IMG/VR virus record: IMGVR_UViG_3300033049_000066
Coordinates: 124,001 to 188,000 of that record
Reading direction: 5' to 3' (one strand)
DNA length: 64,000 nucleotides
The number at the start of each line of letters is the position of its first letter. Positions within the stretch are counted from its first letter, which is position 1. A program made the position numbers and the translations under genes. The notes beneath the pieces were generated by a model that ran no database searches, was not told the origin of the DNA, and saw only the letters and a program-made list of their open reading frames with translations. Of this stretch, positions 8,226 through 61,598 are shown one piece after another.

Positions 8226-8546
8226 ATGAATACAGTACAAAACACATTCGATCGCTTGAAGTACGACATCCAAGAAGATGATTATGGCAGCCGATATTGG
8301 TACATAAATGGTGAATTGCACAGAGAAGATGGGCCTGCTATTGAATTCGCAAATGGTGCTAAGTGGTGGTACAGAAATGGCAAATTACACAGAGAAGATG
8401 GCCCAGCAATTGAGTTTGCGGATGGCTCCAGGGCCTGGTACAGGCATGGCATAAGACACAGAGATGATGGACCGGCTGTTGAATATTCAGATGGCGAAAC
8501 ATACTGGTACATACACGGTGAGGGTCGCGGTGAGGAGGGACCTTAG
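8226..8546 (+). CDS. HR(E/D)DGPA-repeat protein
   Basis: About 23-aa repeats WYxNGxLHREDGPAIE. Confidence 0.85.
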   Translation: MNTVQNTFDRLKYDIQEDDYGSRYWYINGELHREDGPAIEFANGAKWWYRNGKLHREDGPAIEFADGSRAWYRHGIRHRDDGPAVEYSDGETYWYIHGEGRGEEGP

Positions 8547-12087: not shown

Positions 12088-12187
12088 TAAGTCGTTGATT
12101 AATTCATTTGCAAATAACCGCAATTAGAGGTTGACCTTTGGCGTTATATGTCATATAATGTATATAACAGTTAGATATAGAGCAAAA
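12088..12187 (+). promoter_or_regulatory. Repeated early promoter cassette
   Basis: IHF-like box 12088; TTGACC 12131; TATAAT 12154. Confidence 0.85.
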
Positions 12188-18249: not shown

Positions 18250-18673
18250 AAATAAGTAAAAAAGAGGTTGACTTTAACTGTTATATGTCATATAATGTAT
18301 ATAACAGTTAGGAAACAAGCAAAAGATACAGATTAATTGTAAAATAAGTAAAAAAGAGGTTGACTTTAACTGTTATATGTCATATAATGTATATAACAGT
18401 TAGGAAACAAGCAAAAGATATTAGAAGTTAGGACTGTTTTTTATAATGTAGCTCAATGGTAGAGCTAGTGCAGATAGGTAATGTGGATTCTAGATTAAGC
18501 ATTATTGATAAACACGATCCGTACAACGGATGATCCTTGTTCGAATCAAGGCATTATAAAAAACAAGCTTAGCAGTTAGATAAAGATTAATTGTAAAATA
18601 AATGAAAAAGAGGTTGACTTTAACTGTTATATGTCATATAATGTATATAACAGTTAGGAAACAAGCAAAAGAT
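18250..18673 (+). repeat. Three copies of an ~80-bp direct repeat, each a promoter
   Basis: GAGGTTGACTTTAACTGTTATATGTCATATAATGTATATAACAGTTAGGAAACAAGCAAAAGAT with -35 at 18268, 18360, 18614. Confidence 0.9.
18435..18565 (+). ncRNA. tRNA-like RNA with extended acceptor and anticodon arms
   Basis: D arm TAGCTCAATGGTAGAGC, T arm CCTTG-TTCGAAT-CAAGG, 14-bp closing stem. Confidence 0.65.
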
Positions 18674-19247: not shown

Positions 19248-19313
19248 AAAGTGTACTTAAAGTGTACTTAAAGTGTACTTAAAGTGTACTTAAAGTGTAC
19301 TTAAAGTGTACTT
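19248..19313. repeat. 11-bp tandem repeat (AAAGTGTACTT)x6
   Basis: Six perfect copies. Confidence 0.95.
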
Positions 19314-19456
19314 TTAAGGATGTTGTACCGCAGCTTCTAGCTGCAACGTTAGATGTCATAATGCGATTAGTCATTGCGTGAACCCGCCTAACGACGCGAA
19401 CGGAGATCGACTCCCGTTTTTGATGAAATTGCAAACGCATCCTTAAAAGTACATTT
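19304..19456 (+). ncRNA. Candidate multi-hairpin ncRNA closed by a 19-bp stem
   Basis: AAGTGTACTTTTAAGGATG / CATCCTTAAAAGTACATTT; internal GCAGC/GCTGC and CGTTAG/CTAACG. Confidence 0.6.
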
Positions 19457-20013: not shown

Positions 20014-20233
20014 AATTAAAAGTATACGGTGTATATTATTACGTATACTTAAACAAATCGAAGGTGAAGGTTGAGAAATTGACTAAGTAACAACCCTGAA
20101 CTTTGGTAAAGATGGATAAAAGTGCCGGTCATTTCCTCCATCCAAGTCCCTGAGGCGTAGACCTCTACATAACGGTAGGTCAATACTGTTGCGGACTTGT
20201 CAATGGCCTCAAATTTAAAAGAGTAAGCAGAGC

Positions 20234-20309
20234 TCCAGGTTAACGTTCAATGGTGAGACGTGCTCGACTGTTAATCGAGAGGAGACTGAATCGTTCTCAG
20301 TACCTGGAG
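20234..20309 (+). tRNA. tRNA-Asn(GTT), no encoded CCA, extended acceptor stem
   Basis: TCCAGGT/ACCTGGA; CTCGA-ctGTTaa-TCGAG. Confidence 0.75.
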
Positions 20310-21091
20310 CTCTGCTTATTATTATATTCATCAACTGAATTCTTTAGCGTTTCGTACGATATCGAACAGTTAGTTTTCTTTTGATTATTTTTGGTCCAGG
20401 ACATTAATTCACAATTTAGCGGGTGTTTTATATAATAAGGGTCGTATCCGTTACGGATTGCAGTATTTACAGAAACCTTATGATCTCGAGTAATTCCTGA
20501 TGTATTTGAATACGACCACATTCCGTGTTCTTTAAGTATGCTGTTGTATTGCTCAAACAATTCCGGATAATTAGATAATGAAAACGTAAACGCATATCTG
20601 TTTCGATTATTTCGTTTATATAGATATGCGTGGTCGTTACAATATTTTTGTTTAATTCGTGAAATAAATTTTTCATTACAATGAGCACACTTTGTTAACC
20701 AAATTTTTGAATATGGCGAAGTTACTTTAGGCTTCTTTACTTTAGGCTTCTTTACTTTAGGCTTTGCTGGGTATTTTTCTTTAAGTGTTTTGGACAATTT
20801 TTTATAATGTTCGGTATCTCGTGCAAGATTATTGCATGTAGCTGAACAACTCCTTGAGCAAAATTTATTATGTCGCTGGATATACGGTAACGCAATCTCG
20901 CAGTGTCTACAGGCATTAGGATTTTCGCTGTATTTAAAAAGAACTATCTTATGATTTTTGCGGATGGCGCTTAATGTAGATTTTGCGTTATTAATCTTGT
21001 GTTGGTGATAGCCGGACTTATGCACTTTATTATGAGCTGATAATCCATATACTGATTTAAATTCTTTATCGCATGTTTTACATTTATACAT
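20297..21091 (-). CDS. Free-standing HNH homing endonuclease with zinc fingers
   Basis: C2H2 finger, CRHC..FCSRSC, TRDHKVS..IKHPLNCEL..NNQK; ATAAATA upstream. Confidence 0.8.
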   Translation of the reverse strand: MYKCKTCDKEFKSVYGLSAHNKVHKSGYHQHKINNAKSTLSAIRKNHKIVLFKYSENPNACRHCEIALPYIQRHNKFCSRSCSATCNNLARDTEHYKKLSKTLKEKYPAKPKVKKPKVKKPKVTSPYSKIWLTKCAHCNEKFISRIKQKYCNDHAYLYKRNNRNRYAFTFSLSNYPELFEQYNSILKEHGMWSYSNTSGITRDHKVSVNTAIRNGYDPYYIKHPLNCELMSWTKNNQKKTNCSISYETLKNSVDEYNNKQSSRY

Positions 21092-21514: not shown

Positions 21515-21704
21515 TGTCGTGTGCCATTGGAACGATTTCTGGTAAATGATACGATGCAGTGGTAATTGACCGAAACAGGTTGGCTTGGTCGCTAACAATG
21601 TCGAGATAGGAAACTGTAACTGAAGCACTATTCCTAACCAGTTGATGTGCGGATAACGTATTATTTACCAGAGAGATTGAGCTGATGGATAACACACGGC
21701 GCCA
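21515..21704 (+). ncRNA. ~190-nt rod-like RNA ending in CCA
   Basis: TGTCGTGTG/CACACGGCG-CCA; inner 18-bp stem TTTCTGGTAAATGATACG/CGTATTATTTACCAGAGA. Confidence 0.65.
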
Positions 21705-22045: not shown

Positions 22046-22723
22046 ATGAAAACATATTATACAATTTATCAAGTTACAAACCAAGTAAACGGCAAAACCT
22101 ATATAGGAGCACATAAGACCAAAAACTTGAATGATGGCTACATGGGGTCAGGTAAATACGTAAACCGTGCTATATCAAAGCACGGGATAGATAAATTCAC
22201 AAAAGAAATACTCTTTATATTTAATAGCGCAGCTGAGATGTACGAAAAAGAAGGTGAGCTAGTTAACGAAGAATTTATTACAGAAGCTAATACATATAAC
22301 TTAAAAATTGGCGGATTTGGCGGATTTGACTACATTAATCAAAACCCAGAAATGCAAAATAACAGAACACCCGAAAGTATCTCCAAGGGCGGCCAGACGA
22401 CATGGACCAAACACAAAAAACAAATAAAAACACGCCTTAAAGAAAATAACAAAAATTTATGGAAGTTTCACTACAGCAAAATGAAAGAGCTTTCTAAAAT
22501 CGGAGTAGCAGCAATGAGCTCCCCGGCCGCCGTGGCTAAGAAAAAACAAACATTTGCGAAAATATCGCACCAGCAAGGGATTCGCAATTCGCAATTCGGA
22601 ACGATGTGGATTACCGATGGTATTGTAAACAAAAAGATTAAAAAAACTACCCCAATGCCAACCGGGTTTCGTAAAGGTAGAGTATTAAAACCACACCAAA
22701 CTAAAAGAATTATTGAGAAGTAG
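22046..22723 (+). CDS. Free-standing GIY-YIG (Seg-like) homing endonuclease
   Basis: TIYQVTN..NGKTYIG..GYMGSG..E..YNL; C-terminal GTMWITDG..GFRKGR. Confidence 0.9.
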   Translation: MKTYYTIYQVTNQVNGKTYIGAHKTKNLNDGYMGSGKYVNRAISKHGIDKFTKEILFIFNSAAEMYEKEGELVNEEFITEANTYNLKIGGFGGFDYINQNPEMQNNRTPESISKGGQTTWTKHKKQIKTRLKENNKNLWKFHYSKMKELSKIGVAAMSSPAAVAKKKQTFAKISHQQGIRNSQFGTMWITDGIVNKKIKKTTPMPTGFRKGRVLKPHQTKRIIEK

Positions 22724-28388: not shown

Positions 28389-28718
28389 TTAGCTCGCTGT
28401 AAAATTTACAGGTATGCTCGGTTCGACAGCTATAACAAATTCTAATTGCGCCCAGTCACTAGTAATACCGTTAATGTCAACTTCGCGCACACCAGCTGTC
28501 CAGTTACCAGCTTCAATTGGATTAGCCAGATCGGATATTGGTGCTACAAAAGATTGACTATTGGATATAACACCCATGATTATATTAAAATCGCTATCAG
28601 GAGCGCCAGTTGGCTTAATTGCTAAATCATAGCCTTTACGCTGTGAAGCGTCATATGTGCTTGAGTCAACGCGAGTTGTTGCGCCGTCCCAGGTAAATTC
28701 AGTTGGATTGATTATCAT
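28389..28718 (-). CDS. FN3/Ig-like small protein
   Basis: FTWD...GYDL...GNW..VREVD.NG..SDW; ATAAATA upstream. Confidence 0.6.
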   Translation of the reverse strand: MIINPTEFTWDGATTRVDSSTYDASQRKGYDLAIKPTGAPDSDFNIIMGVISNSQSFVAPISDLANPIEAGNWTAGVREVDINGITSDWAQLEFVIAVEPSIPVNFTAS

Positions 28719-28761
28719 TTTATTTTCCTATGTGATGTAACTATTTATCGTCTCTTACAAA

Positions 28762-29349
28762 TTACCAGGGAATTAATGATATTAATTTGTTAATGAAAGA
28801 TTTTTTAGTAGTCTTCATTGCTCTGTAACGTTCCCAGTCAAACAGTTTGCCGGGGTCTGTTTTACGCCTTGGTGACACATGATCGTGCCCGGCGATGTTC
28901 GCGACTGGGAATTTGTAAGTACGAAGTAATTCTTCGGTTAGTTCAATAAGTGCATCGTACTGCGCATCAGTATAGCCGCTTTCTTGGGTGGCAATCAGCT
29001 CGATGCCAAGCATCCAATTATTGCAATTGTCGTACCCGAGCCAGCGTGAACGACCAGCATGCCAGGCCTTCATCGGCAGTGGAACAAGATCGTAAACTGT
29101 ACCGTCTCGAGATATCATGTAGTGCGCAGATGCGTACATGCGATTAGGCAAATCTTTCATCTTAAACCACTTGCGATCTTTTTCCGGACGGTTTAAATCC
29201 TTAAATAATTGAATACATTTTTCAGGGTTAAATGGTTCGTCCGGAAACTGATACTTGCCACTGAAATAGTGAATTACAATGCCGTTAACTACTTTCATCT
29301 TAGATGAACTATAGCAATAATCTGGAAGCTTTTCGATAACTTTTTTCAT
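28762..29349 (-). CDS. N-acetylmuramoyl-L-alanine amidase (Amidase_2/AmpD-like), probable endolysin
   Basis: IVIHY, SAHY, AWHAG, GIEL, GHDHVSPRRKTDPG. Confidence 0.9.
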   Translation of the reverse strand: MKKVIEKLPDYCYSSSKMKVVNGIVIHYFSGKYQFPDEPFNPEKCIQLFKDLNRPEKDRKWFKMKDLPNRMYASAHYMISRDGTVYDLVPLPMKAWHAGRSRWLGYDNCNNWMLGIELIATQESGYTDAQYDALIELTEELLRTYKFPVANIAGHDHVSPRRKTDPGKLFDWERYRAMKTTKKSFINKLISLIPW

Positions 29350-29413
29350 TTTTGGACTCCTATCGAGTATTTATTAGGTTGACAAACAGGCAGGAAAATT
29401 ATATAATATATAG

Positions 29414-29887
29414 ATGATAAATCAAATTACAGGTAATTTATTTTCAGTAAAAGAAGGCTACATTATACACGGGTGCAACGCACAAGGTGTAATGGGTGCT
29501 GGGGTCGGGAGGACTATGAAATTCACATACCCGGGCGCATACAACATATATAAAAATTACATCAACAAAGCACGTGAATTAGGTGTATCCCCACTGGGAT
29601 CAAATACATATTATGCCATGAACAAATTAGTTATTATTAACGCTGTGACACAAGAATACTACGGAAATGACGGAAAGCAATACACCGATTATGATGCTGT
29701 TCGTGCTTGTTTTTATGATATAAATGCAGAAATTTTGCGATCACAAGAAATATTTGATAATATTCCCCGAGTGCTTAACTTTCCGATGATTGGATGTGGC
29801 TTTGGTGGTGGCAACTGGGAAGTTATAGAAGCTATCATAGAAAAAGAAATTAATAATAGTTTTGAAATGGTCTTATGGACTTTATAG
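29414..29887 (+). CDS. Macro-domain (Appr-1-p/ADP-ribosylglycohydrolase-like) protein
   Basis: GNLF..IIHGCNAQGVMGAGV..PMIGCGFGGGNW. Confidence 0.9.
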   Translation: MINQITGNLFSVKEGYIIHGCNAQGVMGAGVGRTMKFTYPGAYNIYKNYINKARELGVSPLGSNTYYAMNKLVIINAVTQEYYGNDGKQYTDYDAVRACFYDINAEILRSQEIFDNIPRVLNFPMIGCGFGGGNWEVIEAIIEKEINNSFEMVLWTL

Positions 29888-29898
29888 ATACTGAATAA

Positions 29899-29985
29899 CC
29901 CTCGGTGATGAAATTGGTAAACATAGAAGATTTAAAATCTTCCGCCTGAACAGGCTTGCGGGTTCAACTCCCGCCTGAGGGACCA
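29899..29985 (+). tRNA. tRNA-Leu(TAA)
   Basis: GAAGA-ttTAAaa-TCTTC; CCA. Confidence 0.9.
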
Positions 29986-29991
29986 AACAAT

Positions 29992-30088
29992 CCAAAGATT
30001 ACGCCGATTCTCCGCGGAACGGTGAATGGATGCCTCGCTTAGGCGCAGGCTGTGAATAACGTTGGTTTGACTCCAACTCTTTGGGCCA
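29992..30088 (+). ncRNA. tRNA-like RNA with acceptor, T arm and CCA but aberrant D and anticodon arms
   Basis: CCAAAGA/TCTTTGG-GCCA; GTTGG-TTTGACT-CCAAC. Confidence 0.55.
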
Positions 30089-30127
30089 ATTTAAAAGTGT
30101 ACTTAGGGGTGGTTGAATGTGCAAAGG

Positions 30128-30201
30128 GGCGACTTTAGCTTAATGGTAAAGCCCTCGGTTGTGATCCGAAAAGATGCGAGTTCGAATCTTCGTAGGTCGC
30201 C
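30128..30201 (+). tRNA. tRNA-His(GTG) inside a 34-bp flanking stem
   Basis: G-1:C73; ttGTGat; no CCA. Confidence 0.85.
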
Positions 30202-30262
30202 CCTTTGCGCATTCAACCACCCCTAAGTACATTTACGTTACAACACATGATAAATACTTACT

Positions 30263-30484
30263 ATGAAAGCAAATGAAATTATGCACGAAAGAACTAGTAA
30301 CCGCATTAAGGTACAAATGCACGAATACGGACCTATTGGTAATCGAAAATATTCATTAGTGGATATGCGAACTCGTAAGACACGAGCTACATCGTTCAAC
30401 GGACAGTTTGAGGCGAAAGCATACGCAAACAAAAGGAATTGGTTTATTAGCCCCGTTAATATAATCGAACCCGTTTCCAATTAA
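30263..30484 (+). CDS. Small putative internal virion protein
   Basis: MKANEIMHE; ATAAATA upstream. Confidence 0.6.
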   Translation: MKANEIMHERTSNRIKVQMHEYGPIGNRKYSLVDMRTRKTRATSFNGQFEAKAYANKRNWFISPVNIIEPVSN

Positions 30485-30574
30485 TCAAGTTAACCTAAAT
30501 ACTAGACATTAGTCCTAAACGATAGTATAATTGTACAAAGAATCATATACAATTTAACACTAACCAGGACCTCT

Positions 30575-31735
30575 ATGAAAACAAAATTCATGATCGGCGG
30601 TGATACCGTACACGTATTCAATATGAACGAAGAACTAGCGTTGGATAAACTCCCGCCACGGATCTACACCGTCCGGTTTGACCCACTACAGGGCTTTCAT
30701 CTTGGCATCACAAAAGATAAGCTTGACTTGCCTAGTAAGATTTACGGTGAGACTCCAATGCGTGTACAAAAGTGTATAGATACATATACCGATCGTACTG
30801 CATCTACCGGCATTTTATTAACCGGTGATAAAGGTACAGGCAAAACATTATTGATGTCGTTGCTTGCAAATGAAATAATTAGCAAATTAAAATTGCCAGT
30901 AATACTCATTAAAGAGGCATACGAAGGTGGTGCGTTTACAAACTTCATTGAATCCATTGGCGAATGCGCTCTTGTGTTTGACGAATTCGGGAAAATGTAT
31001 TGTCCAAATTCGAGACGCAACGAGAATGATATACCTCAAACCTCATTATTATCATTAATGGATGGGGTTGACAAAACCAAGCGTATGTTTATTTTGACTG
31101 AAAACAGCGAGCTGGACATCAACGACTTCATGCTAAATCGTCCGAGTCGCATCTACTATCACTTCAAGTACAACAAGCTTGACGAAGGCAGCGTCATCGG
31201 CTACTGCGAGGATTATAAGGTCGGCACCGAGGAGATAAGAGATATCGTAGATCTTGCTCGGCGCTCACAGGTTTTTAGCTTCGATATGCTCCAGACTATC
31301 GTCGAGGAGCACCAGCGTTACGGTACGTCAATAGGCGAGGTTGCGGAAGATTTAAATATCGACACGCGCGAAGAACAGGGCGATATGATTGAGGTGCTAA
31401 AAATACTCGAGCGTGGCACGAAAAATGAGCGTGAGATCTATGGCACGCCGTACGTCACAAAACCTAACAGTAGCTACACGTACATCAACATCAAGGATAA
31501 TAAAATTGAAAGTTCTGAGGTTGAGATGCCAACTGCAACGGCAGTGGATAGCACTGATAGCAGCGAAGATAGCCCTGTATGCGCAAGCGAGGAAAATAAC
31601 TATCGCTCCGAGTACGTCGAGGCGAAGAACTTAGCTTACGAAAAAGATGGGCAGCTGGTTTACGAAACAGAAAAATTCACCTTCATCGCAAAAGATATGC
31701 CCAAGCTTCAAACAAATTATTTGAAATTTTTCTAG
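30575..31735 (+). CDS. AAA+ ATPase
   Basis: GDKGTGKT, LVFDEFGK, LLSLMDG, NRPSR. Confidence 0.9.
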   Translation: MKTKFMIGGDTVHVFNMNEELALDKLPPRIYTVRFDPLQGFHLGITKDKLDLPSKIYGETPMRVQKCIDTYTDRTASTGILLTGDKGTGKTLLMSLLANEIISKLKLPVILIKEAYEGGAFTNFIESIGECALVFDEFGKMYCPNSRRNENDIPQTSLLSLMDGVDKTKRMFILTENSELDINDFMLNRPSRIYYHFKYNKLDEGSVIGYCEDYKVGTEEIRDIVDLARRSQVFSFDMLQTIVEEHQRYGTSIGEVAEDLNIDTREEQGDMIEVLKILERGTKNEREIYGTPYVTKPNSSYTYINIKDNKIESSEVEMPTATAVDSTDSSEDSPVCASEENNYRSEYVEAKNLAYEKDGQLVYETEKFTFIAKDMPKLQTNYLKFF

Positions 31736-31744
31736 GTAAACGAA

Positions 31745-32137
31745 ATGCGCACTAAATTATTAATTCTTGTAACTTTAACAGCACCACTATTTTTAATTGA
31801 CTGGTCGGCCAAGGAGAAGAGTTCCGGTGGTGAGGTCGACGCACTTTACTGGCACGGAGGGAGTCGCTACACCGTGAAGGACGACAATGGGGGCCTGATC
31901 ACAAGCAGAACGATACCGCCCTGGGGTAGTCCACACAACGGCAATGTCATTGTGTACAGTGATCTTGCTCCGGGAGAAAAAACTTGGTATCTCTGTGAGT
32001 GGGATTGGAGTTGGATGTACGGCACGATGGGTGGGGATGCGAATTGTGAAATTCACATTCACGGACTAGATGATATCATCCCCGGTAATTGGGATCATGG
32101 CAAATTTGGCAGAGGGTCAATCACACGCATAGAATAA
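31745..32137 (+). CDS. Membrane-anchored hypothetical protein
   Basis: Hydrophobic N-terminus; WDHGKFGRG. Confidence 0.65.
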   Translation: MRTKLLILVTLTAPLFLIDWSAKEKSSGGEVDALYWHGGSRYTVKDDNGGLITSRTIPPWGSPHNGNVIVYSDLAPGEKTWYLCEWDWSWMYGTMGGDANCEIHIHGLDDIIPGNWDHGKFGRGSITRIE

Positions 32138-32157
32138 AATATCGCCAAAAAGAATAC

Positions 32158-32233
32158 AGTGACATAGCTCAATTGGCAGAGCACGAAGCTCATAACTTCG
32201 AAGACGCAGGATCGTTGCCTGCTGTCACTACCA
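32158..32233 (+). tRNA. tRNA-Met(CAT)
   Basis: AGTGACA/TGTCACT; ctCATaa; CCA. Confidence 0.88.
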
Positions 32234-32270
32234 GACACTGAACAAATAGCAGTTAACTGCAGGAGGTAAC

Positions 32271-32747
32271 ATGTTCACCGTAGATGAAAAAACAGAAATA
32301 GTACAGTACTTAAAAGATATGCCCGCGAATTCCTCAGTGTATATCGGTTCTGACTCCGTGAAATACAAACGCAAGGGGTTATGGTACGCTCGGTACAACG
32401 TAGCATTCATTGTCCACATTGCATCAAAGCACGGTGGTAAGATTTTTCACACTACATCTGTCGAACGTGATTACGATCCTAAGAAGGAAAAGCCTCGTAT
32501 GCGACTAATGACCGAAGTATACAAAGCCGTAGGTGTTTACATGGAATTCGCGGAGGTACTTGAAGATTTACCTGTCGAAATCCACATCGATGTTAATTCA
32601 GATGAGAAGCACAACTCCAGCATCGTGCTGCGAGAAGCACTTGGCTACATCAAAGGAATGACCGGACTAGATGGAGTGCCTAAGCCAGATGCCTGGGCCG
32701 CATCGACGGTTAGTGATTACGGTGCCAGAGGGAAATTTACACACTAA
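32271..32747 (+). CDS. RNase H-like YkuK-family protein
   Basis: VYIGSDS, RLMTEV, EIHIDVN, KPDAWAAS..SD. Confidence 0.85.
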   Translation: MFTVDEKTEIVQYLKDMPANSSVYIGSDSVKYKRKGLWYARYNVAFIVHIASKHGGKIFHTTSVERDYDPKKEKPRMRLMTEVYKAVGVYMEFAEVLEDLPVEIHIDVNSDEKHNSSIVLREALGYIKGMTGLDGVPKPDAWAASTVSDYGARGKFTH

Positions 32748-32852: not shown

Positions 32853-32892
32853 ATTTTAGATGCATTATAATGCTCGTATGATAAATACCGTT

Positions 32893-33876
32893 ATGCCAAG
32901 ACATAAAAAAATCGCGCAAAGACATGCGAAAATTCTTAATATACAGAATCCCGCAACAGGGAAATTTGAGTTAGATAAAATTAAAACAAAATACGATAGA
33001 ATCCTTAAATACTCATTTGCGGAAATATATATTATAGACGCTGGAACTATGAAGTTCACCGAAGTCAGCGCAAACGCACTGCGGAACCTCGGCTACACGC
33101 TGGCGGAGATGCAGAAGATGAAGGCTGGTGACGTCGCACCTCAGCTTTCTGCCGGGCAATGTAACAAGATTTTTGTTGCGTTGAACAGTGGGGAAAATGA
33201 GGTCGCGAAGATGAAAACAGTTATTTTGCGCAAAGATGGATCAGAGTACAAAGTTAATCTTCGCGTACAGTACGCGAGTGGTGAAGACCCAGTGTACATC
33301 ATAATGGCGTCGGACATCACAGAACGTGACAGGTACGAAGCTGAGTTAAAAGCCCTTGCCTTCCGAGACCCCGGCACAGATTTGTACAATAGACGGTACT
33401 TCTTAGAACACCTTAGGGGAACGATAAACCATGCTAACAGAATGCACTCTCCTATTGGATTAATTTTAATCGACATGGATGATTTTAGTAAGGTCAATAA
33501 CAATTACGGACACATCGCTGGTGACAAGGTAATCTCAGATTTTGCAAATAAGATATGCGATGTATTTTCAAGGAAGACAGACGTCGTAGCAAGATACGGT
33601 GGGGATGAATTTGTAGTGCTGTGTATCGACAATTCCGCTGAAACATTAATCGCAAAATGTAACCAGCTTATAGCTCGACTAAACAAAGCATTGTACTACG
33701 ACGGTCACACAATTGTCCAAACCGCAAGCATAGGCATTTGCCACTACAACGCGAATGCTATAACAATCTCAACTGAGGATCTTATTAACGGTGCTGACAT
33801 TGCTATGTACAAGGCCAAGGCAGCTGGTAAAAATCAAGTCAAAATATGTAACAACGACGACCTCAATGAGGATTAA
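32893..33876 (+). CDS. PAS-GGDEF diguanylate cyclase
   Basis: PAS (..RKDGS..DITE), NRRYF, IDMDDF..VNN.YGH.AGD, RKTD I-site, RYGGDEF; start placed after ATAAATA. Confidence 0.92.
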   Translation: MPRHKKIAQRHAKILNIQNPATGKFELDKIKTKYDRILKYSFAEIYIIDAGTMKFTEVSANALRNLGYTLAEMQKMKAGDVAPQLSAGQCNKIFVALNSGENEVAKMKTVILRKDGSEYKVNLRVQYASGEDPVYIIMASDITERDRYEAELKALAFRDPGTDLYNRRYFLEHLRGTINHANRMHSPIGLILIDMDDFSKVNNNYGHIAGDKVISDFANKICDVFSRKTDVVARYGGDEFVVLCIDNSAETLIAKCNQLIARLNKALYYDGHTIVQTASIGICHYNANAITISTEDLINGADIAMYKAKAAGKNQVKICNNDDLNED

Positions 33877-33894: not shown

Positions 33895-34205
33895 ATTACT
33901 ATTTGAAGCTAAAGTAGGTTATCACGGACAAGGGTGCAAATCCCTTCATTTCCACCAAAAGCATCTTTTTACAAGGGTTCTTTTGGGGGATGATTTCAGA
34001 TTCGACGTGGGACTGAGGATAAGTGGATAGTACGGCAACGCAGAAGTCGTGACACTTGAAGAAGCAAACTTAAAATAATCGCAAACGATTCATTTTACAC
34101 TGAGGAATTAATGGCTGCGTAAAGCGCCACCCTCTGAGGTTGAAACAGCCTTATAACCAGCTTGTTAGTCGTGCCCTATTGACGAATGAACACAATGTAG
34201 GGGAC
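33895..34205 (+). ncRNA. ssrA: Circularly permuted (two-piece) tmRNA; tag ANDSFYTEELMAA*; outer boundaries approximate
   Basis: T arm + CATTTCC-ACCA (ends 33957) lies upstream of GGGGATG...GATTCGAC (33986); tag at 34081-34122. Confidence 0.88.
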
Positions 34206-37703: not shown

Positions 37704-37928
37704 ATGAATGATAGCACTTACGAAACTAGAATAGATTATGACGGTAACAAGCGATGGTACGTAAATGGAAAATTACACCGGGAAGATGGCCCAGCTATTG
37801 AACTTAAAAACGGTAGCAAGTACTGGTACAGAAACGACAAATTGCACCGGGAAGATGGCCCAGCTATTGAGTTCGCGAACGGTAGTAAGCACTGGTACTT
37901 AAACGGAATAAAAGTTGAGGAGTTCTAG
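37704..37928 (+). CDS. HR(E/D)DGPA-repeat protein (short)
   Basis: MNDSTYETRID...GIKVEEF. Confidence 0.85.
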   Translation: MNDSTYETRIDYDGNKRWYVNGKLHREDGPAIELKNGSKYWYRNDKLHREDGPAIEFANGSKHWYLNGIKVEEF

Positions 37929-38039
37929 TAAGTCATTGATTAATTGATTTACAAATAGCCGCAATTAGAGGTTGACATCTTGGGCTACTTGTCTTATAAT
38001 GTATATAACAGTTAGATAAAGAGCAAAGGAACAAAGATT

Positions 38040-38471
38040 ATGAATGATAGCACTTACGAAACTAGAATAGATCGTGTCGGTAACAAGCGATGGTACAACA
38101 ATGGCAAATTACATAGAGAAGATGGCCCAGCCGTTGAACTCGCAGACGGTGACAATCACTGGTACGTAAACGGTAAAATACATAGAGAAGATGGGCCAGC
38201 TATTGAGTTCGCAAATGGTGACAAATTTTGGTACATAAATGATAAATTACATAGAGAAGATGGGCCAGCTATCGAGTACGCAAATGGTAACAAGCGGTGG
38301 TACATAAATGGTAAATTACACCGAGAAGATGGGCCGGCTATTGTATTTGCAAACGGTAGTAAGCACTGGTACTTAAACGGCAAAAGACACAGAGATAACG
38401 CACCGGCTATTGAATTTGCGGATGGCGATAAGGCGTGGTACTTAGACGGAATAAAAGTTGAGGAGTTCTAG
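38040..38471 (+). CDS. HR(E/D)DGPA-repeat protein
   Basis: Same termini as 37704, three more repeats. Confidence 0.85.
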   Translation: MNDSTYETRIDRVGNKRWYNNGKLHREDGPAVELADGDNHWYVNGKIHREDGPAIEFANGDKFWYINDKLHREDGPAIEYANGNKRWYINGKLHREDGPAIVFANGSKHWYLNGKRHRDNAPAIEFADGDKAWYLDGIKVEEF

Positions 38472-45099: not shown

Positions 45100-45476
45100 G
45101 TACAGCACAAGACACATTCAATCGATTAAAGTACGACATTCAAATACATGCTGATGGCACTAAAATTTGGTACAAGCATGGCGAAAGACATAGAACAGAT
45201 GGGCCAGCCGTTGAACAGCTAAATGGTGACAAATTTTGGTACAAAGATGGCAAAAGACACAGAACAGATGGGCCAGCGATTGAATACGCGGATGGTGATA
45301 AAAAATGGTATCAGCATGGCAGATTACATAGAGATGACGGTCCAGCCGTTGAACACGCCGACGGCACCAAAATTTGGTACAAGAATGGTAAAAAACACAG
45401 AGATGATGGGCCTGCTATTGAATATCCAAATTGTGACAAATTTTGGTACATAAATGGCGAGCTAATAGACAAATGA
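45096..45476 (+). CDS. HR(E/D)DGPA-repeat protein
   Basis: ATGA-coupled; same leader. Confidence 0.85.
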   Translation: MSTAQDTFNRLKYDIQIHADGTKIWYKHGERHRTDGPAVEQLNGDKFWYKDGKRHRTDGPAIEYADGDKKWYQHGRLHRDDGPAVEHADGTKIWYKNGKKHRDDGPAIEYPNCDKFWYINGELIDK

Positions 45477-45991
45477 ATACTGCACAAGACATATTTGATC
45501 GCCTGAAGTACGACATCCAAATAGATGCCTGTGGTGACAAATTTTGGTACCAAAACGGTAAAAGACATAGAGATGACGGGCCAGCTATCGAGTACGCAGA
45601 TAGCAGCAAAGAGTGGTACAAGCATGGCGAAAGACATAGAACAGATGGACCAGCCGTTGAACAGCTAAATGGCGAGCGACATTGGTACAAGGATGGCAAA
45701 AGACATAGAGAAGATGGCCCCGCATTTGTATCAACAAATGGCACCAAGCACTGGTACAAGCATGGCAAATTACACCGAGAAGATGGGCCATCAATTGAGC
45801 TAGCAAATGGCGACCAACATTGGTACATAAATGGCAAAAGACACAGAGAAGATGGACCAGCTATTGAACAGGTAAATGGCGACCGAAGTTGGTACCAAAA
45901 TGGTGAAAGACATAGAGAAGATGGCCCGGCAATTGAATACTCAGATGGCACCAAGCACTGGTACTTAAATGGTGAAAGAATATACAAATGA
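45473..45991 (+). CDS. HR(E/D)DGPA-repeat protein
   Basis: ATGA-coupled; MNTAQDIFDRLK. Confidence 0.85.
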   Translation: MNTAQDIFDRLKYDIQIDACGDKFWYQNGKRHRDDGPAIEYADSSKEWYKHGERHRTDGPAVEQLNGERHWYKDGKRHREDGPAFVSTNGTKHWYKHGKLHREDGPSIELANGDQHWYINGKRHREDGPAIEQVNGDRSWYQNGERHREDGPAIEYSDGTKHWYLNGERIYK

Positions 45992-46368
45992 ATACAGCAC
46001 AAGACACATGGGATTGCTTAAAATACGACATCCAAATAGATGCCTGTGGTGACAAATTTTGGTACCAAAATGGTGAAAGACATAGAGATGATGGGCCAGC
46101 TATCGAGTACGCAGATAGCAGCAAAGAGTGGTACATAAATGGGCTATCGCACAGAGATGATGGACCAGCTATTGAGTACGCGGATGGTGACAAGTTTTGG
46201 TACATAAATGGTAAAAGACATAGAGAAGATGGGCCAGCTGTTGAGCTAGCAAATGGCGGCCGAAGTTGGTTCGTTAATGGTGAATTACATAGAGAAGATG
46301 GACCAGCTGTTGAACTAGCAAATGGCGACCGAAGTTGGTACATAAATGGTAAAAGAATATATAAATAG
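45988..46368 (+). CDS. HR(E/D)DGPA-repeat protein
   Basis: ATGA-coupled; MNTAQDTWDCLK. Confidence 0.85.
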   Translation: MNTAQDTWDCLKYDIQIDACGDKFWYQNGERHRDDGPAIEYADSSKEWYINGLSHRDDGPAIEYADGDKFWYINGKRHREDGPAVELANGGRSWFVNGELHREDGPAVELANGDRSWYINGKRIYK

Positions 46369-59243: not shown

Positions 59244-59693
59244 ATGAATACAGCACAAAACACATTCAATCTATTAAAGTACGATATTCGTGTTGACAAA
59301 GATGGTAGCACGAGATGGTACATAAATGGCAGATTACACAGAGATGATGGCCCAGCTGTTGAGTTCGCAAGCGGTGGCAGAGCGTGGTACCAAAATGGCA
59401 GAAGACATAGAGATGATGGACCAGCTGTTGAATACGCGAGCAGTGACAAATTTTGGTACAAAGACGGCAAAAGACATAGAGATGATGGGCCAGCTATTGA
59501 ATTCGCAGGCGGCACGAATCATTGGTACAAAGACGGAAAGTTACACAGAGAAGATGGGCCTGCTATTGAACTCGCGATTGGCGCGAATCATTGGTACCAA
59601 AATGGCAAATTACATAGAGAAGATGGCCCGGCGGTTGAATCCGCAGATGGCGAAAAACAGTGGTACTTAAATGGGAAGGAAGTAACCAAATGA
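59244..59693 (+). CDS. HR(E/D)DGPA-repeat protein
   Basis: Promoter 59179-59207; MNTAQNTFNLLK. Confidence 0.85.
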   Translation: MNTAQNTFNLLKYDIRVDKDGSTRWYINGRLHRDDGPAVEFASGGRAWYQNGRRHRDDGPAVEYASSDKFWYKDGKRHRDDGPAIEFAGGTNHWYKDGKLHREDGPAIELAIGANHWYQNGKLHREDGPAVESADGEKQWYLNGKEVTK

Positions 59694-60154
59694 GTACAGC
59701 ACAAGCGACCTTTGATGGGTTAAAATCTAGAATAACCGTAGACGATGATGGTGGCGCAAGATGGTACTCCGGGCTAGTATTACACAGAATAGGTGGGCCA
59801 GCAATTGAGCTAGCAAATGGTGGCAGGTACTGGTACATAAATGGTGAATTACACAGAGAAGATGGCCCGGCTATTACGTACGCAAATGGCACAACTCAAT
59901 GGTACCGGCATGGCAGATTACACAGAGAAAATGGTCCAGCTATTGAACGACTAACCGGCAGCAAGCACTGGTACATAAATGGCGTGAGACACAGGGAAGA
60001 TGGCCCGGCCGCTATGTACGAAAGTGGTGATCAATATTGGTACATAAATGGTGAGCTGCACAGAGAAGATGGGCCAGCTATTGAATTCGCGAATAGTGAC
60101 CAATATTGGTACAGAAACGGCAAGATAATAGACAAGCCTTTGGATATTTGCTAA
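59690..60154 (+). CDS. HR(E/D)DGPA-repeat protein
   Basis: ATGA-coupled; MSTAQATFDGLK. Confidence 0.85.
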   Translation: MSTAQATFDGLKSRITVDDDGGARWYSGLVLHRIGGPAIELANGGRYWYINGELHREDGPAITYANGTTQWYRHGRLHRENGPAIERLTGSKHWYINGVRHREDGPAAMYESGDQYWYINGELHREDGPAIEFANSDQYWYRNGKIIDKPLDIC

Positions 60155-60384
60155 CTTATTGATTTATATAGGATTCTAGCATTTATTAAAACAGAGTAAT
60201 ATATTGGTAAGTCGTTGAAATATATAAGAATAGTGGTTTTTACCGGCGTTTTTAAACGGCATTCACGTATCAGTACCAGTAAACATATCAAAACCGCCCT
60301 AAAATAATCGCAATTAGAGGTTGACCTTTGGCGCTACTTGTTATATAATGTATGTAACAGTTAGATAAAGAGCAAGGGAAGATT

Positions 60385-61221
60385 ATGAATCTAGCACAAG
60401 ACACATTCAATCGCTTAAAAACTGAAATTGTAATAGACGAATTTGGCACTAAGTATTGGTACGTCAACAGTGAATTACACAGAGAAGATGGCCCGGCTGT
60501 TGAACATTCGGATGGTAGCAAAGAATGGTACAAATCCAGAAAATTACATAGAGAAAATGGCCCAGCTGTTGAACTTACGGGCGGTGGCAAGTATTGGTAC
60601 TTAGACGGAAAACAACATAGAGATGATGGGCCTGCGGTAGAATTTACAAATGGCGGCAAAGAATGGTACAAACATGGCAAAAGACATAGAAAAGATGGGC
60701 CAGCTATTGAGTACGAGAATGGCTCCAAATTTTGGTACATAAATGATAAATTACATAGAGAAGATGGGCCAGCTATCGAGTACGCAAATGGTAACAAGCG
60801 GTGGTACATAAATGGTAAATTACACCGAGAAGATGGGCCGGCTATTGAACTTAAAAACGGTGGCAAGTACTGGTACATAAATGGAAAATTACACAGAGAA
60901 GATGGGCCAGCTATTGAATACGGGGATGGCACCCAGGCCTGGTACTTAAATGATAAATTACACAGAGATGATGGACCGGCTGTAGAATACGCAGATGGTG
61001 GCAGTGAGTGGTACCAAAATGGCAAAAGACATAGAGATGATGGTCCAGCTGTAGAACATTCAGCCGGTATACACAGAGAAGATGGGCCAGCTATTGAACG
61101 GGCAAATGGTGGCAGGTACTGGTACAAGGATGGCAAAAGACATAGAGAAAATGGACCAGCTATTGAACGGGCAAATGATGAAAAACAGTGGTACTTAAAT
61201 GGAAAGAAAGTAGACAAATGA
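60385..61221 (+). CDS. HR(E/D)DGPA-repeat protein (longest member)
   Basis: Promoter 60321-60349; about 11 repeats, one truncated. Confidence 0.85.
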   Translation: MNLAQDTFNRLKTEIVIDEFGTKYWYVNSELHREDGPAVEHSDGSKEWYKSRKLHRENGPAVELTGGGKYWYLDGKQHRDDGPAVEFTNGGKEWYKHGKRHRKDGPAIEYENGSKFWYINDKLHREDGPAIEYANGNKRWYINGKLHREDGPAIELKNGGKYWYINGKLHREDGPAIEYGDGTQAWYLNDKLHRDDGPAVEYADGGSEWYQNGKRHRDDGPAVEHSAGIHREDGPAIERANGGRYWYKDGKRHRENGPAIERANDEKQWYLNGKKVDK

Positions 61222-61598
61222 ATACCGCACAAGACATATTTGATCGCTTGAAGTACGACATTGTCACTGACAGTGCAGGCAACAAATATTGGTACTTACA
61301 CGGCAAATTACACAGAGATGATGGGCCTGCTATTGAGTACACAAATGGAACCAAGTTCTGGTACAAAAATGGCGAGAGGCACAGAGATGATGGCCCAGCG
61401 ACTATGTACCCAAATGGTGACAAGTTTTGGTACAGAAACAATAAAAGACACAGAGATGATGGCCCAGCTATTGAATACGCAGATGGTAGTAAGGAGTGGT
61501 ACATAGATAACAATTTACACAGAGAAGAGGGGCCTGCTATTGAGTACACAGCTGGCCAAAAAAAGTGGTACACGCATGGAGTAAAGGTAGACAAATGA
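61218..61598 (+). CDS. HR(E/D)DGPA-repeat protein
   Basis: ATGA-coupled; MNTAQDIFDRLK. Confidence 0.85.
   Translation: MNTAQDIFDRLKYDIVTDSAGNKYWYLHGKLHRDDGPAIEYTNGTKFWYKNGERHRDDGPATMYPNGDKFWYRNNKRHRDDGPAIEYADGSKEWYIDNNLHREEGPAIEYTAGQKKWYTHGVKVDK

What the first reader, a model, noticed from the sequence alone, without database searches (positions are those of the whole stretch)
30095..30234. tRNA-His embedded in a 34-bp flanking duplex
Seen: 30095-30128 pairs with 30201-30234, directly extending the acceptor stem. The only two non-Watson-Crick positions are G-U wobbles on the + strand RNA, which suggests RNA-level selection. CCA is not encoded. The duplex would occlude normal RNase P and 3' trimming. 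Its outer end (AAGTGTACTT/AAGTACATTT) is the same as the one closing the ncRNA at 19304-19456. Inference: caged precursors released by a dsRNA nuclease (RNase III-like or phage-encoded), or a protected tRNA reservoir.
Basis: partly seen in the sequence, partly recalled or inferred. Interest (0 to 1): 0.7.

Follow-up and report, generated by a model that had tools for sequence, protein, structure and literature searches.

The report
Nested leader-trailer clamp around phage tRNA-His
A histidine tRNA gene of an uncultured marine jumbo phage sits inside a 41-base-pair RNA helix made of two stacked copies of a conserved "clamp", which related phages also place around tRNA-His and tRNA-like RNAs; it most likely marks these RNAs for an unusual double-strand-nuclease maturation route that nobody has tested.

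Summary
30095-30128 pairs with 30201-30234 and runs straight into the acceptor stem, giving 41 unbroken pairs with 3 G.U on the + strand (fold z = -11.8). Position 76 is U, so only CC of CCA is encoded.

Related phages show the duplex is not a one-off. tRNA-His in three other uncultured phages and one Parcubacteria MAG carries a leader-trailer helix of exactly 14 bp beyond the acceptor stem. Each has an invariant box, 5'-AAGUG/CAUUU-3', with a fixed G.U 11 bp from the G-1:C73 pair. The pairs in between covary (92% paired; 11 of 21 pairs changed on both sides; 0 of 500 shuffles match). The same box closes tRNA-like ncRNAs in three phages, including window 19304-19456.

The window's duplex is two such modules nested. 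The outer one (21 bp) is a clamp plus the stub of a former tRNA-His acceptor stem. The inner one (20 bp) is a diverged clamp plus the real tRNA.

A consensus promoter upstream and no terminator imply co-transcription. No phage RNase III, Ro or CCA-adding enzyme was found.

Best reading: an RNA-level processing and folding clamp, probably cut by host RNase III. This step is inferred; no RNA data could be found.

The parts
29379..29407 (+). Consensus sigma-70-type promoter (TTGACA-17-TATAAT, 12 of 12) that heads the unit macro-domain ORF, tRNA-Leu, tRNA-like RNA, clamped tRNA-His
   Evidence: The next promoter-like site is at 30503-30531 and no terminator-like site lies between. Co-transcription is inferred, not shown.
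29899..29985 (+). tRNA-Leu(UAA) with encoded CCA, followed by a 6-nt spacer
29992..30088 (+). tRNA-like RNA: 7-bp acceptor stem, T arm, G73 and CCA, but a UUAG tetraloop where the anticodon loop should be. It is followed by the 6-nt spacer ATTTAA.
   Evidence: Read from the sequence and the fold. ARAGORN and Rfam did not call it.
30095..30108 (+). Outer clamp, 5' strand (pairs 13 to 0). The invariant box AAGUG is 30095-30099, with the G of the G.U at 30097.
30109..30115 (+). Outer stub, 5' strand (GUGGUUG). This is a former tRNA-His acceptor strand; compare GUGUCGG in G001 and GUGGGCG in G005.
30116..30128 (+). Inner clamp, 5' strand (AAUGUGCAAAGGG), ending in G-1 at 30128
   Evidence: It resembles the outer clamp in 7 of 11 positions, with compensatory flips.
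30129..30201 (+). tRNA-His(GUG): positions +1 to 72 plus C73 at 30201. It has a T-stem bulge.
30202..30213 (+). Inner clamp, 3' strand (CCUUUGCGCAUU). C74 and C75 are 30202-30203 and U at position 76 is 30204.
30214..30220 (+). Outer stub, 3' strand (CAACCAC)
   Evidence: The 3' side CACCCC-N-AAGTACATTTAC matches the tRNA-His 3' ends in L071 and L008.
30221..30234 (+). Outer clamp, 3' strand. The box CAUUU is 30230-30234.
19248..19313 (+). Six exact tandem copies of AAAGTGTACTT. The last copy is the 5' strand of the ncRNA clamp.
19304..19456 (+). tRNA-like ncRNA closed by a 20-bp helix that carries the same box
   Evidence: (z = -6.3). Counterparts occur in G001 and in L207.
20222..20320 (+). 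tRNA-Asn(GUU) with a 12-bp leader-trailer extension (19-bp helix in all) and no CCA
20020..20050 (+). A 9-bp hairpin, AAGUAUACG...CGUAUACUU, directly after tRNA-Gly. It may be a clamp without cargo.
   Evidence: Not followed further.

Best explanation
The duplex is an RNA structure in a tRNA precursor: a leader-trailer clamp that belongs to a conserved module.

The canonical module is 14 bp that continue the acceptor stem of tRNA-His. Pair 0 is G-1:C73. Pairs 1-2 are GG:C74C75. Pairs 3-8 are variable and covary. Pairs 9-12 are an invariant box, G:C, U:A, G.U, A:U. With the 7-bp acceptor stem this makes a 21-bp helix. The same box closes 20-bp helices around tRNA-like ncRNAs.

In this phage two modules are nested. 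The outer one is a clamp plus the 7-bp stub of a former tRNA-His acceptor stem. The inner one is a diverged clamp plus the working tRNA-His. Together they give 41 bp.

Proposed mechanism (inferred, not shown):
1. The unit is transcribed from the promoter at 29379 together with tRNA-Leu and the tRNA-like RNA.
2. The helix forms, brings the two ends together, and blocks RNase P and 3' exonucleases.
3. A host double-strand endonuclease of the RNase III type cuts each roughly two-turn module at a fixed distance from the box.
4. A staggered cut at pair 0 would leave 5'-pG-1 and a 3' end at C75, and the host CCA-adding enzyme would then add A76.
5. The nested form would need two successive cuts.
For: Structure: 41 unbroken pairs and z = -11.8.

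Conservation: the clamp has the same length and register in G000, G001, G005, G004 and the Parcubacteria contig L224. Pairing stops after pair 13 in all the canonical members.

Covariation on alignment A3: 92.4% of cells paired against 76.3% in shuffles; 11 of 21 pairs changed on both sides; 0 of 500 shuffles as high; slid registers give only 36-51% paired.

The box and its G.U are invariant in the five canonical tRNA-His clamps and the three ncRNA clamps; only this window's inner clamp has A:U at that pair. Clamp pair 7 (the seventh pair from the outer end) reads A:U, U:A or G:C in the three ncRNAs.

Strand: the mismatches are G.U on the tRNA strand, and the + strand folds 5.7 kcal/mol better than the - strand.

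Position 76 is A, U or G while C74 and C75 never vary. In this window the pair at position 76 flipped from U:A to A:U, so pairing was kept and the A of CCA was lost.

His and Asn are represented in the phage's 25-tRNA set only by the clamped genes. This argues that they are used as tRNAs. All clamped tRNA-His genes score 42-54 bits as tRNA.

One transcription unit, with no terminator.

Precedent: rRNA leader-trailer helices are recognised and cut by RNase III (PMC10250234, read).
Against: There are no RNA data at all: no RNA run was listed, and the DNA contigs show no variants.

E. coli RNase III is not known to need a specific 5-bp box (my own knowledge). The invariant box could therefore be the site of another protein.

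tRNA-Asn would be left with a CU overhang, not CC, so the tidy CC-plus-A scheme does not generalise.

Clamped tRNA-His genes carry defects: a T-stem bulge here and two acceptor mismatches in G001. They score lower than unclamped relatives, which score 57-62 bits. This could mean relaxed translational constraint.

Related phages G002 and G003 have tRNA-His without a clamp, so the clamp is not essential.

The idea that the inner clamp is a paralogue of the outer one rests on only 7-8 identities in 11-12 positions.
Confidence: 0.5

Rival explanations
1. The clamped RNA is the end product. It is a stable, tRNA-shaped non-coding RNA whose acceptor end is permanently closed. The invariant box with its G.U is the docking site of a phage or host protein. 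The RNA would act as a decoy or RNP, for example for an enzyme or nuclease that reads GUN/Q34 tRNAs, and not in translation.
For: The same box closes tRNA-like ncRNAs that cannot decode. An invariant sequence with a fixed G.U suggests specific recognition. Clamped tRNA-His genes have structural defects and lower tRNA scores. G005 carries a second, unclamped tRNA-His. Both clamped tRNAs in this window, His and Asn, are GUN tRNAs.
Against: In G000 and G001 the clamped gene is the only tRNA-His in an otherwise near-complete tRNA set. The G-1:C73 pair, the anticodon loop and C74/C75 are all conserved as in a working tRNA-His. No Ro/TROVE protein was found and no candidate binding protein was identified.
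Confidence: 0.2
2. The helix is a folding and protection clamp and RNase III plays no part. It brings the ends together so that a weak acceptor stem folds correctly in a crowded polycistronic transcript, keeps G-1 paired, and shields the ends. It is then opened by RNase E cuts in the AU-rich spacers, helicase-assisted exonucleases and RNase P.
For: The 16S rRNA leader-trailer helix has a role in biogenesis that is independent of RNase III (PMC10250234). The clamp begins exactly one normal 5-7-nt AU-rich spacer after the preceding CCA, where a tRNA would start. The acceptor stems inside clamps are weak.
Against: A 41-bp helix of about -87 kcal/mol is hard to open without an endonuclease. This model does not explain the invariant box at a fixed distance.
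Confidence: 0.15
3. The second (nested) module is a neutral accident. A duplication of one arm was copied onto the other arm by template switching within the hairpin during replication. It adds nothing to the ancestral 14-bp clamp, and the gene may be on its way to decay.
For: No other nested case turned up in the viral collection. The closest relative, L071, has the ordinary form with CCA. This tRNA-His has the lowest tRNA score, 42 bits, and a T-stem bulge. No variants are seen in the population.
Against: Every one of the 41 pairs is intact, and the inner clamp differs from the outer by compensatory changes. That implies time has passed while pairing was maintained. It is also the only tRNA-His in the record.
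Confidence: 0.1
4. It is a DNA-level element: terminal inverted repeats of a small mobile cassette, a recombination or protein-binding site, or a cruciform.
For: AAGTGTACTT is a near-palindrome and is tandemly repeated six times with an 11-bp period at 19248-19313. A GIY-YIG homing-type endonuclease gene lies in the array. Different cargos share the same ends.
Against: Compensatory changes keep pairing rather than sequence. The mismatches are G.U on the tRNA strand only. The helix is in fixed register with G-1:C73. I saw no target-site duplication in the flanks. The motif is absent from the rest of the genome.
Confidence: 0.05

Closest known systems
rRNA leader-trailer helices processed by RNase III (bacterial rrn operons)
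   Same: Complementary sequences that flank a stable RNA form an extended helix of about 20-27 bp in the primary transcript. The helix is removed during maturation, and it also helps folding (PMC10250234).
   Different: Here the cargo is a 73-nt tRNA or a tRNA-like RNA. The helix is a direct continuation of the acceptor stem. It carries an invariant 5-bp box with a G.U at a fixed distance from G-1, and in this window two modules are nested. Cleavage by RNase III has not been shown.
Ordinary bacterial tRNA-His precursor (8-bp acceptor stem with encoded G-1:C73, cut by RNase P at -1)
   Same: G-1:C73, the GUG anticodon and the cloverleaf are all present.
   Different: Pairing continues 13 more base pairs (33 more in this window) into leader and trailer, and covers C74 and C75. 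A76 is not encoded here. Unclamped tRNA-His genes in related phages extend by 3 pairs or fewer.
Phage T4 tRNA cluster with its stable RNAs (species 1 and 2) and its RNase III-dependent step
   Same: A phage tRNA array interspersed with small stable RNAs of unknown function and a Seg-type homing endonuclease (PMC2330249, abstract listed; for this window). From my own memory, a role of RNase III in T4 tRNA-Gln maturation was reported by Pragai and Apirion in 1981. I did not verify this here.
   Different: As far as I know, T4 has no conserved clamp box and no tRNA enclosed in a long leader-trailer helix.
Bacterial Y RNAs with a tRNA-like domain (YrlA)
   Same: A long helix formed by the two ends, with a conserved protein-binding box, carries a tRNA-like module. 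The permuted clamped element in G005 has the YrlA-like order T arm, closed acceptor hairpin, D arm.
   Different: No Ro/TROVE gene and no Rfam Y RNA match. In the His element the helix extends the acceptor stem, not the anticodon stem, and the cargo has a normal anticodon loop.
Archaeal and algal split or permuted tRNA precursors (leader-trailer helices with bulge-helix-bulge motifs)
   Same: Long helices made from flanking sequences hold tRNA parts together before processing.
   Different: There is no bulge-helix-bulge motif: the helix is continuous. The context is bacterial-type, and this tRNA is neither split nor permuted.

Membership tests
Bacterial-type tRNA-His | Cloverleaf with GUG anticodon that scores above the tRNA model threshold | tested here: met
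   ARAGORN calls tRNA-His(gtg). Rfam RF00005 gives 42 bits against a threshold of 29, with one inserted base in the T stem.
Bacterial-type tRNA-His | Encoded G-1 paired with C73 | tested here: met
   G30128:C30201. The same pair is present in all the clamped relatives.
Bacterial-type tRNA-His | 3' CCA, encoded or added, and charging with histidine | not testable with these tools
   Only C74 and C75 are encoded and position 76 is U. Charging needs an experiment.
RNase III-processed leader-trailer helix | Leader and trailer of a stable RNA form a continuous dsRNA of about two helical turns or more | tested here: met
   41 bp here, 21 bp in the relatives, 20 bp for the ncRNAs.
RNase III-processed leader-trailer helix | Both strands lie on one transcript | tested here: inconclusive
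   Promoter at 29379-29407, the next one at 30503, and no terminator-like site between. No RNA data.
RNase III-processed leader-trailer helix | Staggered cleavage by RNase III | not testable with these tools
   No end-mapping data. No RNase III gene in the phage records, so the enzyme would have to be the host's.
Miniature inverted-repeat mobile element | Terminal inverted repeats with target-site duplication and dispersed copies | tested here: not met
   The motif occurs at two loci only. I saw no duplication in the flanks. Pairing is kept by compensatory change.
Y RNA / YrlA | Ro (TROVE) partner and a match to a known Y RNA model | tested here: not met
   No TROVE hit. No Rfam Y RNA hit at E up to 5.
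Intrinsic terminator | GC-rich hairpin followed by a U tract | tested here: not met
   The scan found none in 28600-30800. The helix is followed by ACGUUAC.
microRNA-precursor-like hairpins (weak Rfam MIR hits) | Score above the family's gathering threshold | tested here: not met
   MIR9555 scores 43.5 bits against a threshold of 119. This and the other MIR hits simply reflect a long hairpin.

The most novel reading that the evidence does not exclude
A clade of marine jumbo phages tags tRNA-His and some tRNA-like RNAs with a sequence-defined RNA 'cage': 14 bp plus an AAGUG/CAUUU box with a G.U placed one helical turn from G-1. This cage routes them through a maturation pathway that bypasses RNase P. 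A ruler-type double-strand nuclease would make both ends in one staggered cut, leaving pG-1 at the 5' end and CC at the 3' end, and the CCA-adding enzyme would add the final A. Cages can be stacked, as in this window, to give stepwise or delayed release.
Probability: 0.2. Interest if true: 0.8.

Novelty: new variant of a known kind. Interest (0 to 1): 0.6.

Why it matters
All bacterial-type tRNA 5' ends are thought to be made by RNase P, and tRNA-His is the special case in which the cut must spare G-1. A conserved helix that buries G-1, C73, C74 and C75, together with a fixed box one helical turn away, points to a different way of defining both ends of a tRNA, or to a new class of tRNA-shaped phage RNPs.

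It also gives a sequence signature (AGUG-N6-GGGG ... CCCC-N5-ACAUUU) that finds such elements in metagenomes. The module is compact and might be reused to release RNAs with defined ends.

If it turns out to be only a folding clamp cut by host RNase III, it is a neat but modest extension of rRNA-type processing to phage tRNAs.

Tried and rejected
RNA evidence. No RNA run could be listed for the element. The two seawater DNA runs hold the phage at about 338x and 20x word depth and show no variants or joints across 28500-32500.

Phage-encoded enzymes. There are no TROVE, RNase III or CCA-adding (PolyA_pol) hits in the 83%-complete record. RNase III is also absent from the complete relatives G001 and G005. 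The RNaseH-like PF04308 gene in the array (32271-32747) is present in G001 and G006 but absent from complete, clamp-bearing G005, so I dropped it as a candidate clamp nuclease.

Known RNA families. Only sub-threshold microRNA-like hits were found. There are no ribozyme or Y RNA matches.

Mobile-element reading. Rejected, as set out under the rival explanations.

Cultured relatives. Nucleotide search finds only tRNA-Leu similarity. The nearest cultured phages by the neighbouring ATPase are under 40% identical: Salicola SCTP-2, Pseudoalteromonas J2-1, Ochrobactrum OC and Agrobacterium Atu_ph07. All four lack even a relaxed clamp pattern. BLAST with a clamped tRNA-His finds only T-arm matches in Vibrio phages.

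Nested form elsewhere. None found.

Generic cargo-free clamp pattern. It gave 81 hits, almost all chance. Only G001 and L207 survive the test for helix extension, and L213 is doubtful.

Cellular distribution. One tRNA-His among three hits in 185,579 species genomes, on a cellular-looking Parcubacteria contig. None of 15 other genomes of its class has the pattern.

Literature. Four searches found no description of such clamps.

Other. ARAGORN did not recover the permuted tmRNA that Rfam finds.

Full report
CONTEXT. The window is bases 124001-188000 of a 293-kb IMG/VR virus record that is about 83% complete. The DNA comes from seawater metagenomes, where the phage is abundant. Between 18.9 and 34.3 kb the window carries an array of 25 tRNA genes called by ARAGORN, plus a permuted tmRNA. 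Small ORFs are interspersed, among them a GIY-YIG Seg-like endonuclease, a macro-domain protein, an AAA ATPase, an RNaseH-like protein and a GGDEF protein. The nearest cultured phages are under 40% identical in the neighbouring ATPase.

THE OBSERVATION. It is correct.
- The repeat finder reports arms 30095-30133 and 30196-30234.
- A scan that allows G.U finds 41 unbroken pairs on the + strand, 30095-30135 with 30194-30234. This is twice the length of any other helix in the tRNA region. The - strand version breaks into 22 + 13 pairs.
- The fold is the expected one, a cloverleaf on top of one long stem. It has -87.3 kcal/mol and z = -11.8. The - strand gives -81.6.
- G-1 (30128) pairs with C73 (30201). 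C74 and C75 are encoded and paired with GG. Position 76 is U.
- 22 of the 28 tRNA or tRNA-like genes listed in the array encode CCA, usually followed by the spacer AATTTAA.
- The tRNA scores 42 bits and has one extra base in the T stem.

THE OUTER END IS A SHARED, CONSERVED MODULE. AAGTGTACTT occurs only at 19249-19313 (six tandem copies) and at 30095 in the whole record. In both places its partner is AAGTACATTT, and both elements start 6 nt after the CCA of a preceding tRNA or tRNA-like gene.

I fetched relatives through the downstream ATPase gene and through sequence patterns. tRNA-His is clamped in the same way in:
- G001 (344 kb, complete);
- G005 (345 kb, complete);
- G004;
- a cellular-looking Parcubacteria MAG contig.

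The truncated contig of the closest relative, L071, keeps the 3' half...CACCCCAAAGTACATTTAC.

Anchored on G-1:C73, all canonical members pair for exactly 14 positions and then stop:
- pairs 1-2 are GG:C74C75;
- pairs 9-12 are invariant (G:C, U:A, G.U, A:U);
- pairs 3-8 vary with compensation: pair 3 is A:U, U:A or C:G; pair 5 is U:A or A:U; pair 6 is C:G, U.G or U:A.

On a five-sequence alignment the 21-pair helix is 92.4% paired, against 76.3% in column shuffles. Eleven pairs change on both sides, 0 of 500 shuffles reach this, and slid registers give 36-51%. This is good evidence for selection on an RNA helix, and the invariant box suggests sequence-specific recognition.

The clamp is not universal. 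tRNA-His in G002, G003, L086 and other phages extends by 3 pairs or fewer. L043 and L052 keep only the 3' motif.

THE SAME BOX CLOSES OTHER CARGO. The ncRNA at 19304-19456 has a 20-bp closing helix and a tRNA-like layout of three hairpins (z = -6.3). It has counterparts in G001 between tRNA-Gly and tRNA-Asn (z = -6.7) and in a third phage contig, L207, inside its tRNA array. The box is identical in all three, and clamp pair 7 (the seventh pair from the outer end) reads A:U, U:A or G:C. tRNA-Asn in the window (20222-20320) has a related 12-bp extension, also lacks CCA, and carries a G.U near the outer end.

THE 34 BP ARE TWO NESTED MODULES.
- The outer 14 bp (30095-30108 with 30221-30234) are the canonical clamp.
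- The next 7 bp (GUGGUUG/CAACCAC) are preceded by GGG and followed by CCC. They match the tRNA-His acceptor ends of the relatives: GGGGUG...CACCCC, then one base, then AAGUACAUUU. So they are the stub of an earlier acceptor stem.
- The inner 13 bp (30116-30128 with 30201-30213) resemble the clamp in 7 of 11 positions on the 5' side and 8 of 12 on the 3' side. The differences are largely compensatory: AA/UU for UU/AA, and G:C for A:U.
- The body of the inner tRNA is close to that of G001, with a near-identical T arm.

The lengths are 21 + 20 = 41 bp, that is, two modules of about two helical turns each.

How the nesting arose is inference. One possibility is a duplication of one arm that was copied to the other arm by template switching. 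Another is replacement of the tRNA body by a second clamped unit. I found no other nested example.

TRANSCRIPTION. A perfect TTGACA-17-TATAAT promoter lies at 29379-29407. The next promoter-like site is at 30503, and no terminator-like site lies between them. So the macro-domain ORF, tRNA-Leu, the tRNA-like RNA at 29992-30088 and both arms of the clamp should be on one transcript. This is inferred, because no RNA run was available.

MECHANISM. What is shown: a conserved, covarying RNA helix in fixed register with G-1, and an invariant box.

What is inferred:
- A helix that buries positions -1 to -14 and 73 to 86 should block the RNase P protein's grip on the leader and should block 3' exonucleases. 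This rests on established knowledge of these enzymes.
- The module is the size of a minimal RNase III substrate.
- RNase III leaves 2-nt 3' overhangs. A cut that makes G-1 the 5' end would therefore leave C75 as the 3' end, ready for addition of A76 by the CCA-adding enzyme.
- That would explain why C74 and C75 are invariant while position 76 is A, U or G, and why this phage could flip the pair at position 76 and lose the A.

The enzyme would have to be the host's. Weak points are listed in the Against line. The strongest rival is that the clamped RNA is itself the product and the box is a protein site.

COMPARISON AND NOVELTY. The closest known system in function is the rRNA leader-trailer helix (PMC10250234). 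I found no description of a conserved clamp on tRNA-His or on phage tRNA-like RNAs. I rate it a new variant of a known kind. The structure and its conservation are solid. The mechanism is open.

Noticed in passing
window 19248-19313: Six exact tandem copies of the 11-mer AAAGTGTACTT. The 10-mer core is self-complementary if G.U is allowed, so the array can fold on itself or compete with the ncRNA clamp. G001 has a single copy at the corresponding place.
   Followed up: partly
window 19304-19456; L069:7245-7405 (-); L207:13405-13552 (-): A family of tRNA-like ncRNAs: a short hairpin with a 3-nt loop, a long hairpin and a T-arm-like hairpin, closed by the same clamp. Found in three phages. Function unknown.
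   Followed up: partly
window 20222-20320: tRNA-Asn(GUU) with a 12-bp leader-trailer extension, no CCA (G73 then CUC) and an unusual T loop, AUCGUUC. It scores only 25 bits in Rfam. His and Asn are both GUN (Q34-type) tRNAs.
   Followed up: partly
window 20020-20050: A 9-bp hairpin, AAGUAUACG...CGUAUACUU, right after tRNA-Gly. It looks like a clamp without cargo, at the position where G001 has its clamped ncRNA.
   Followed up: no
window 29992-30088: A tRNA-like RNA with a good acceptor stem, T arm, G73 and CCA, but a UUAG tetraloop in place of the anticodon loop and an enlarged D arm. ARAGORN and Rfam both missed it. G001 also has an uncalled tRNA-like sequence upstream of its tRNA-His.
   Followed up: partly
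window 21536-21674: Another structured RNA candidate closed by an 18-bp helix with 2 G.U on the + strand (z = -4.7). It lacks the box.
   Followed up: no
window 33897-34122: A circularly permuted (two-piece type) tmRNA gene, Rfam 81.7 bits. The acceptor piece ends in CCA at about 33948 and the coding piece starts with GGGGGAUGAUU. ARAGORN does not find it.
   Followed up: partly
L138:5143-5292 (-), record G005: A 22-bp clamp (AAGUACUUUGCAGG... with ...CCUGCAGAGUACUU) encloses a circularly permuted tRNA-like RNA. The order is: variable hairpin, T arm, acceptor hairpin containing GCCA plus a loop, D arm. This resembles YrlA or a two-piece tRNA.
   Followed up: partly
L008:2012-2032 and 2139-2159, record G001: A perfect 21-nt antisense copy of the T arm and 3' acceptor part of tRNA-Lys lies about 106 nt upstream of that part. 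It could pair with the tRNA in the precursor.
   Followed up: no
L224:1836-1932 (Parcubacteria MAG contig JBDRPV010000094.1): A tRNA-His (62 bits) on a contig with cellular-looking genes (permease, GNAT, DnaJ domain) carries the same box in the same register, with CCA encoded. None of 15 other genomes of its class has the pattern.
   Followed up: partly
window 22046-22723; 29414-29887; 32271-32747; 32860-33876: ORFs inside the tRNA array: a GIY-YIG Seg-like endonuclease, a macro-domain protein, an RNaseH-like PF04308 protein, and a PAS-GGDEF diguanylate cyclase.
   Followed up: partly
window 8298-8484, 37741-38416, 45162-46356, 59316-61550: Many 69-bp (23-codon) tandem repeats in several long ORFs, which suggests a repeat-protein family expanded in this phage.
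   Followed up: no
window 18250-18420 (also near 12148, 18631, 53691): A repeated cassette that contains a consensus promoter-like sequence, TTGACT...ATGTCATATAAT. Two exact 92-bp copies lie just upstream of the tRNA array.
   Followed up: no
G000:C1:114659-114732 (outside the window): ARAGORN calls a suppressor-type tRNA with anticodon UUA, which would read the UAA stop. Relative G002 has one too.
   Followed up: no
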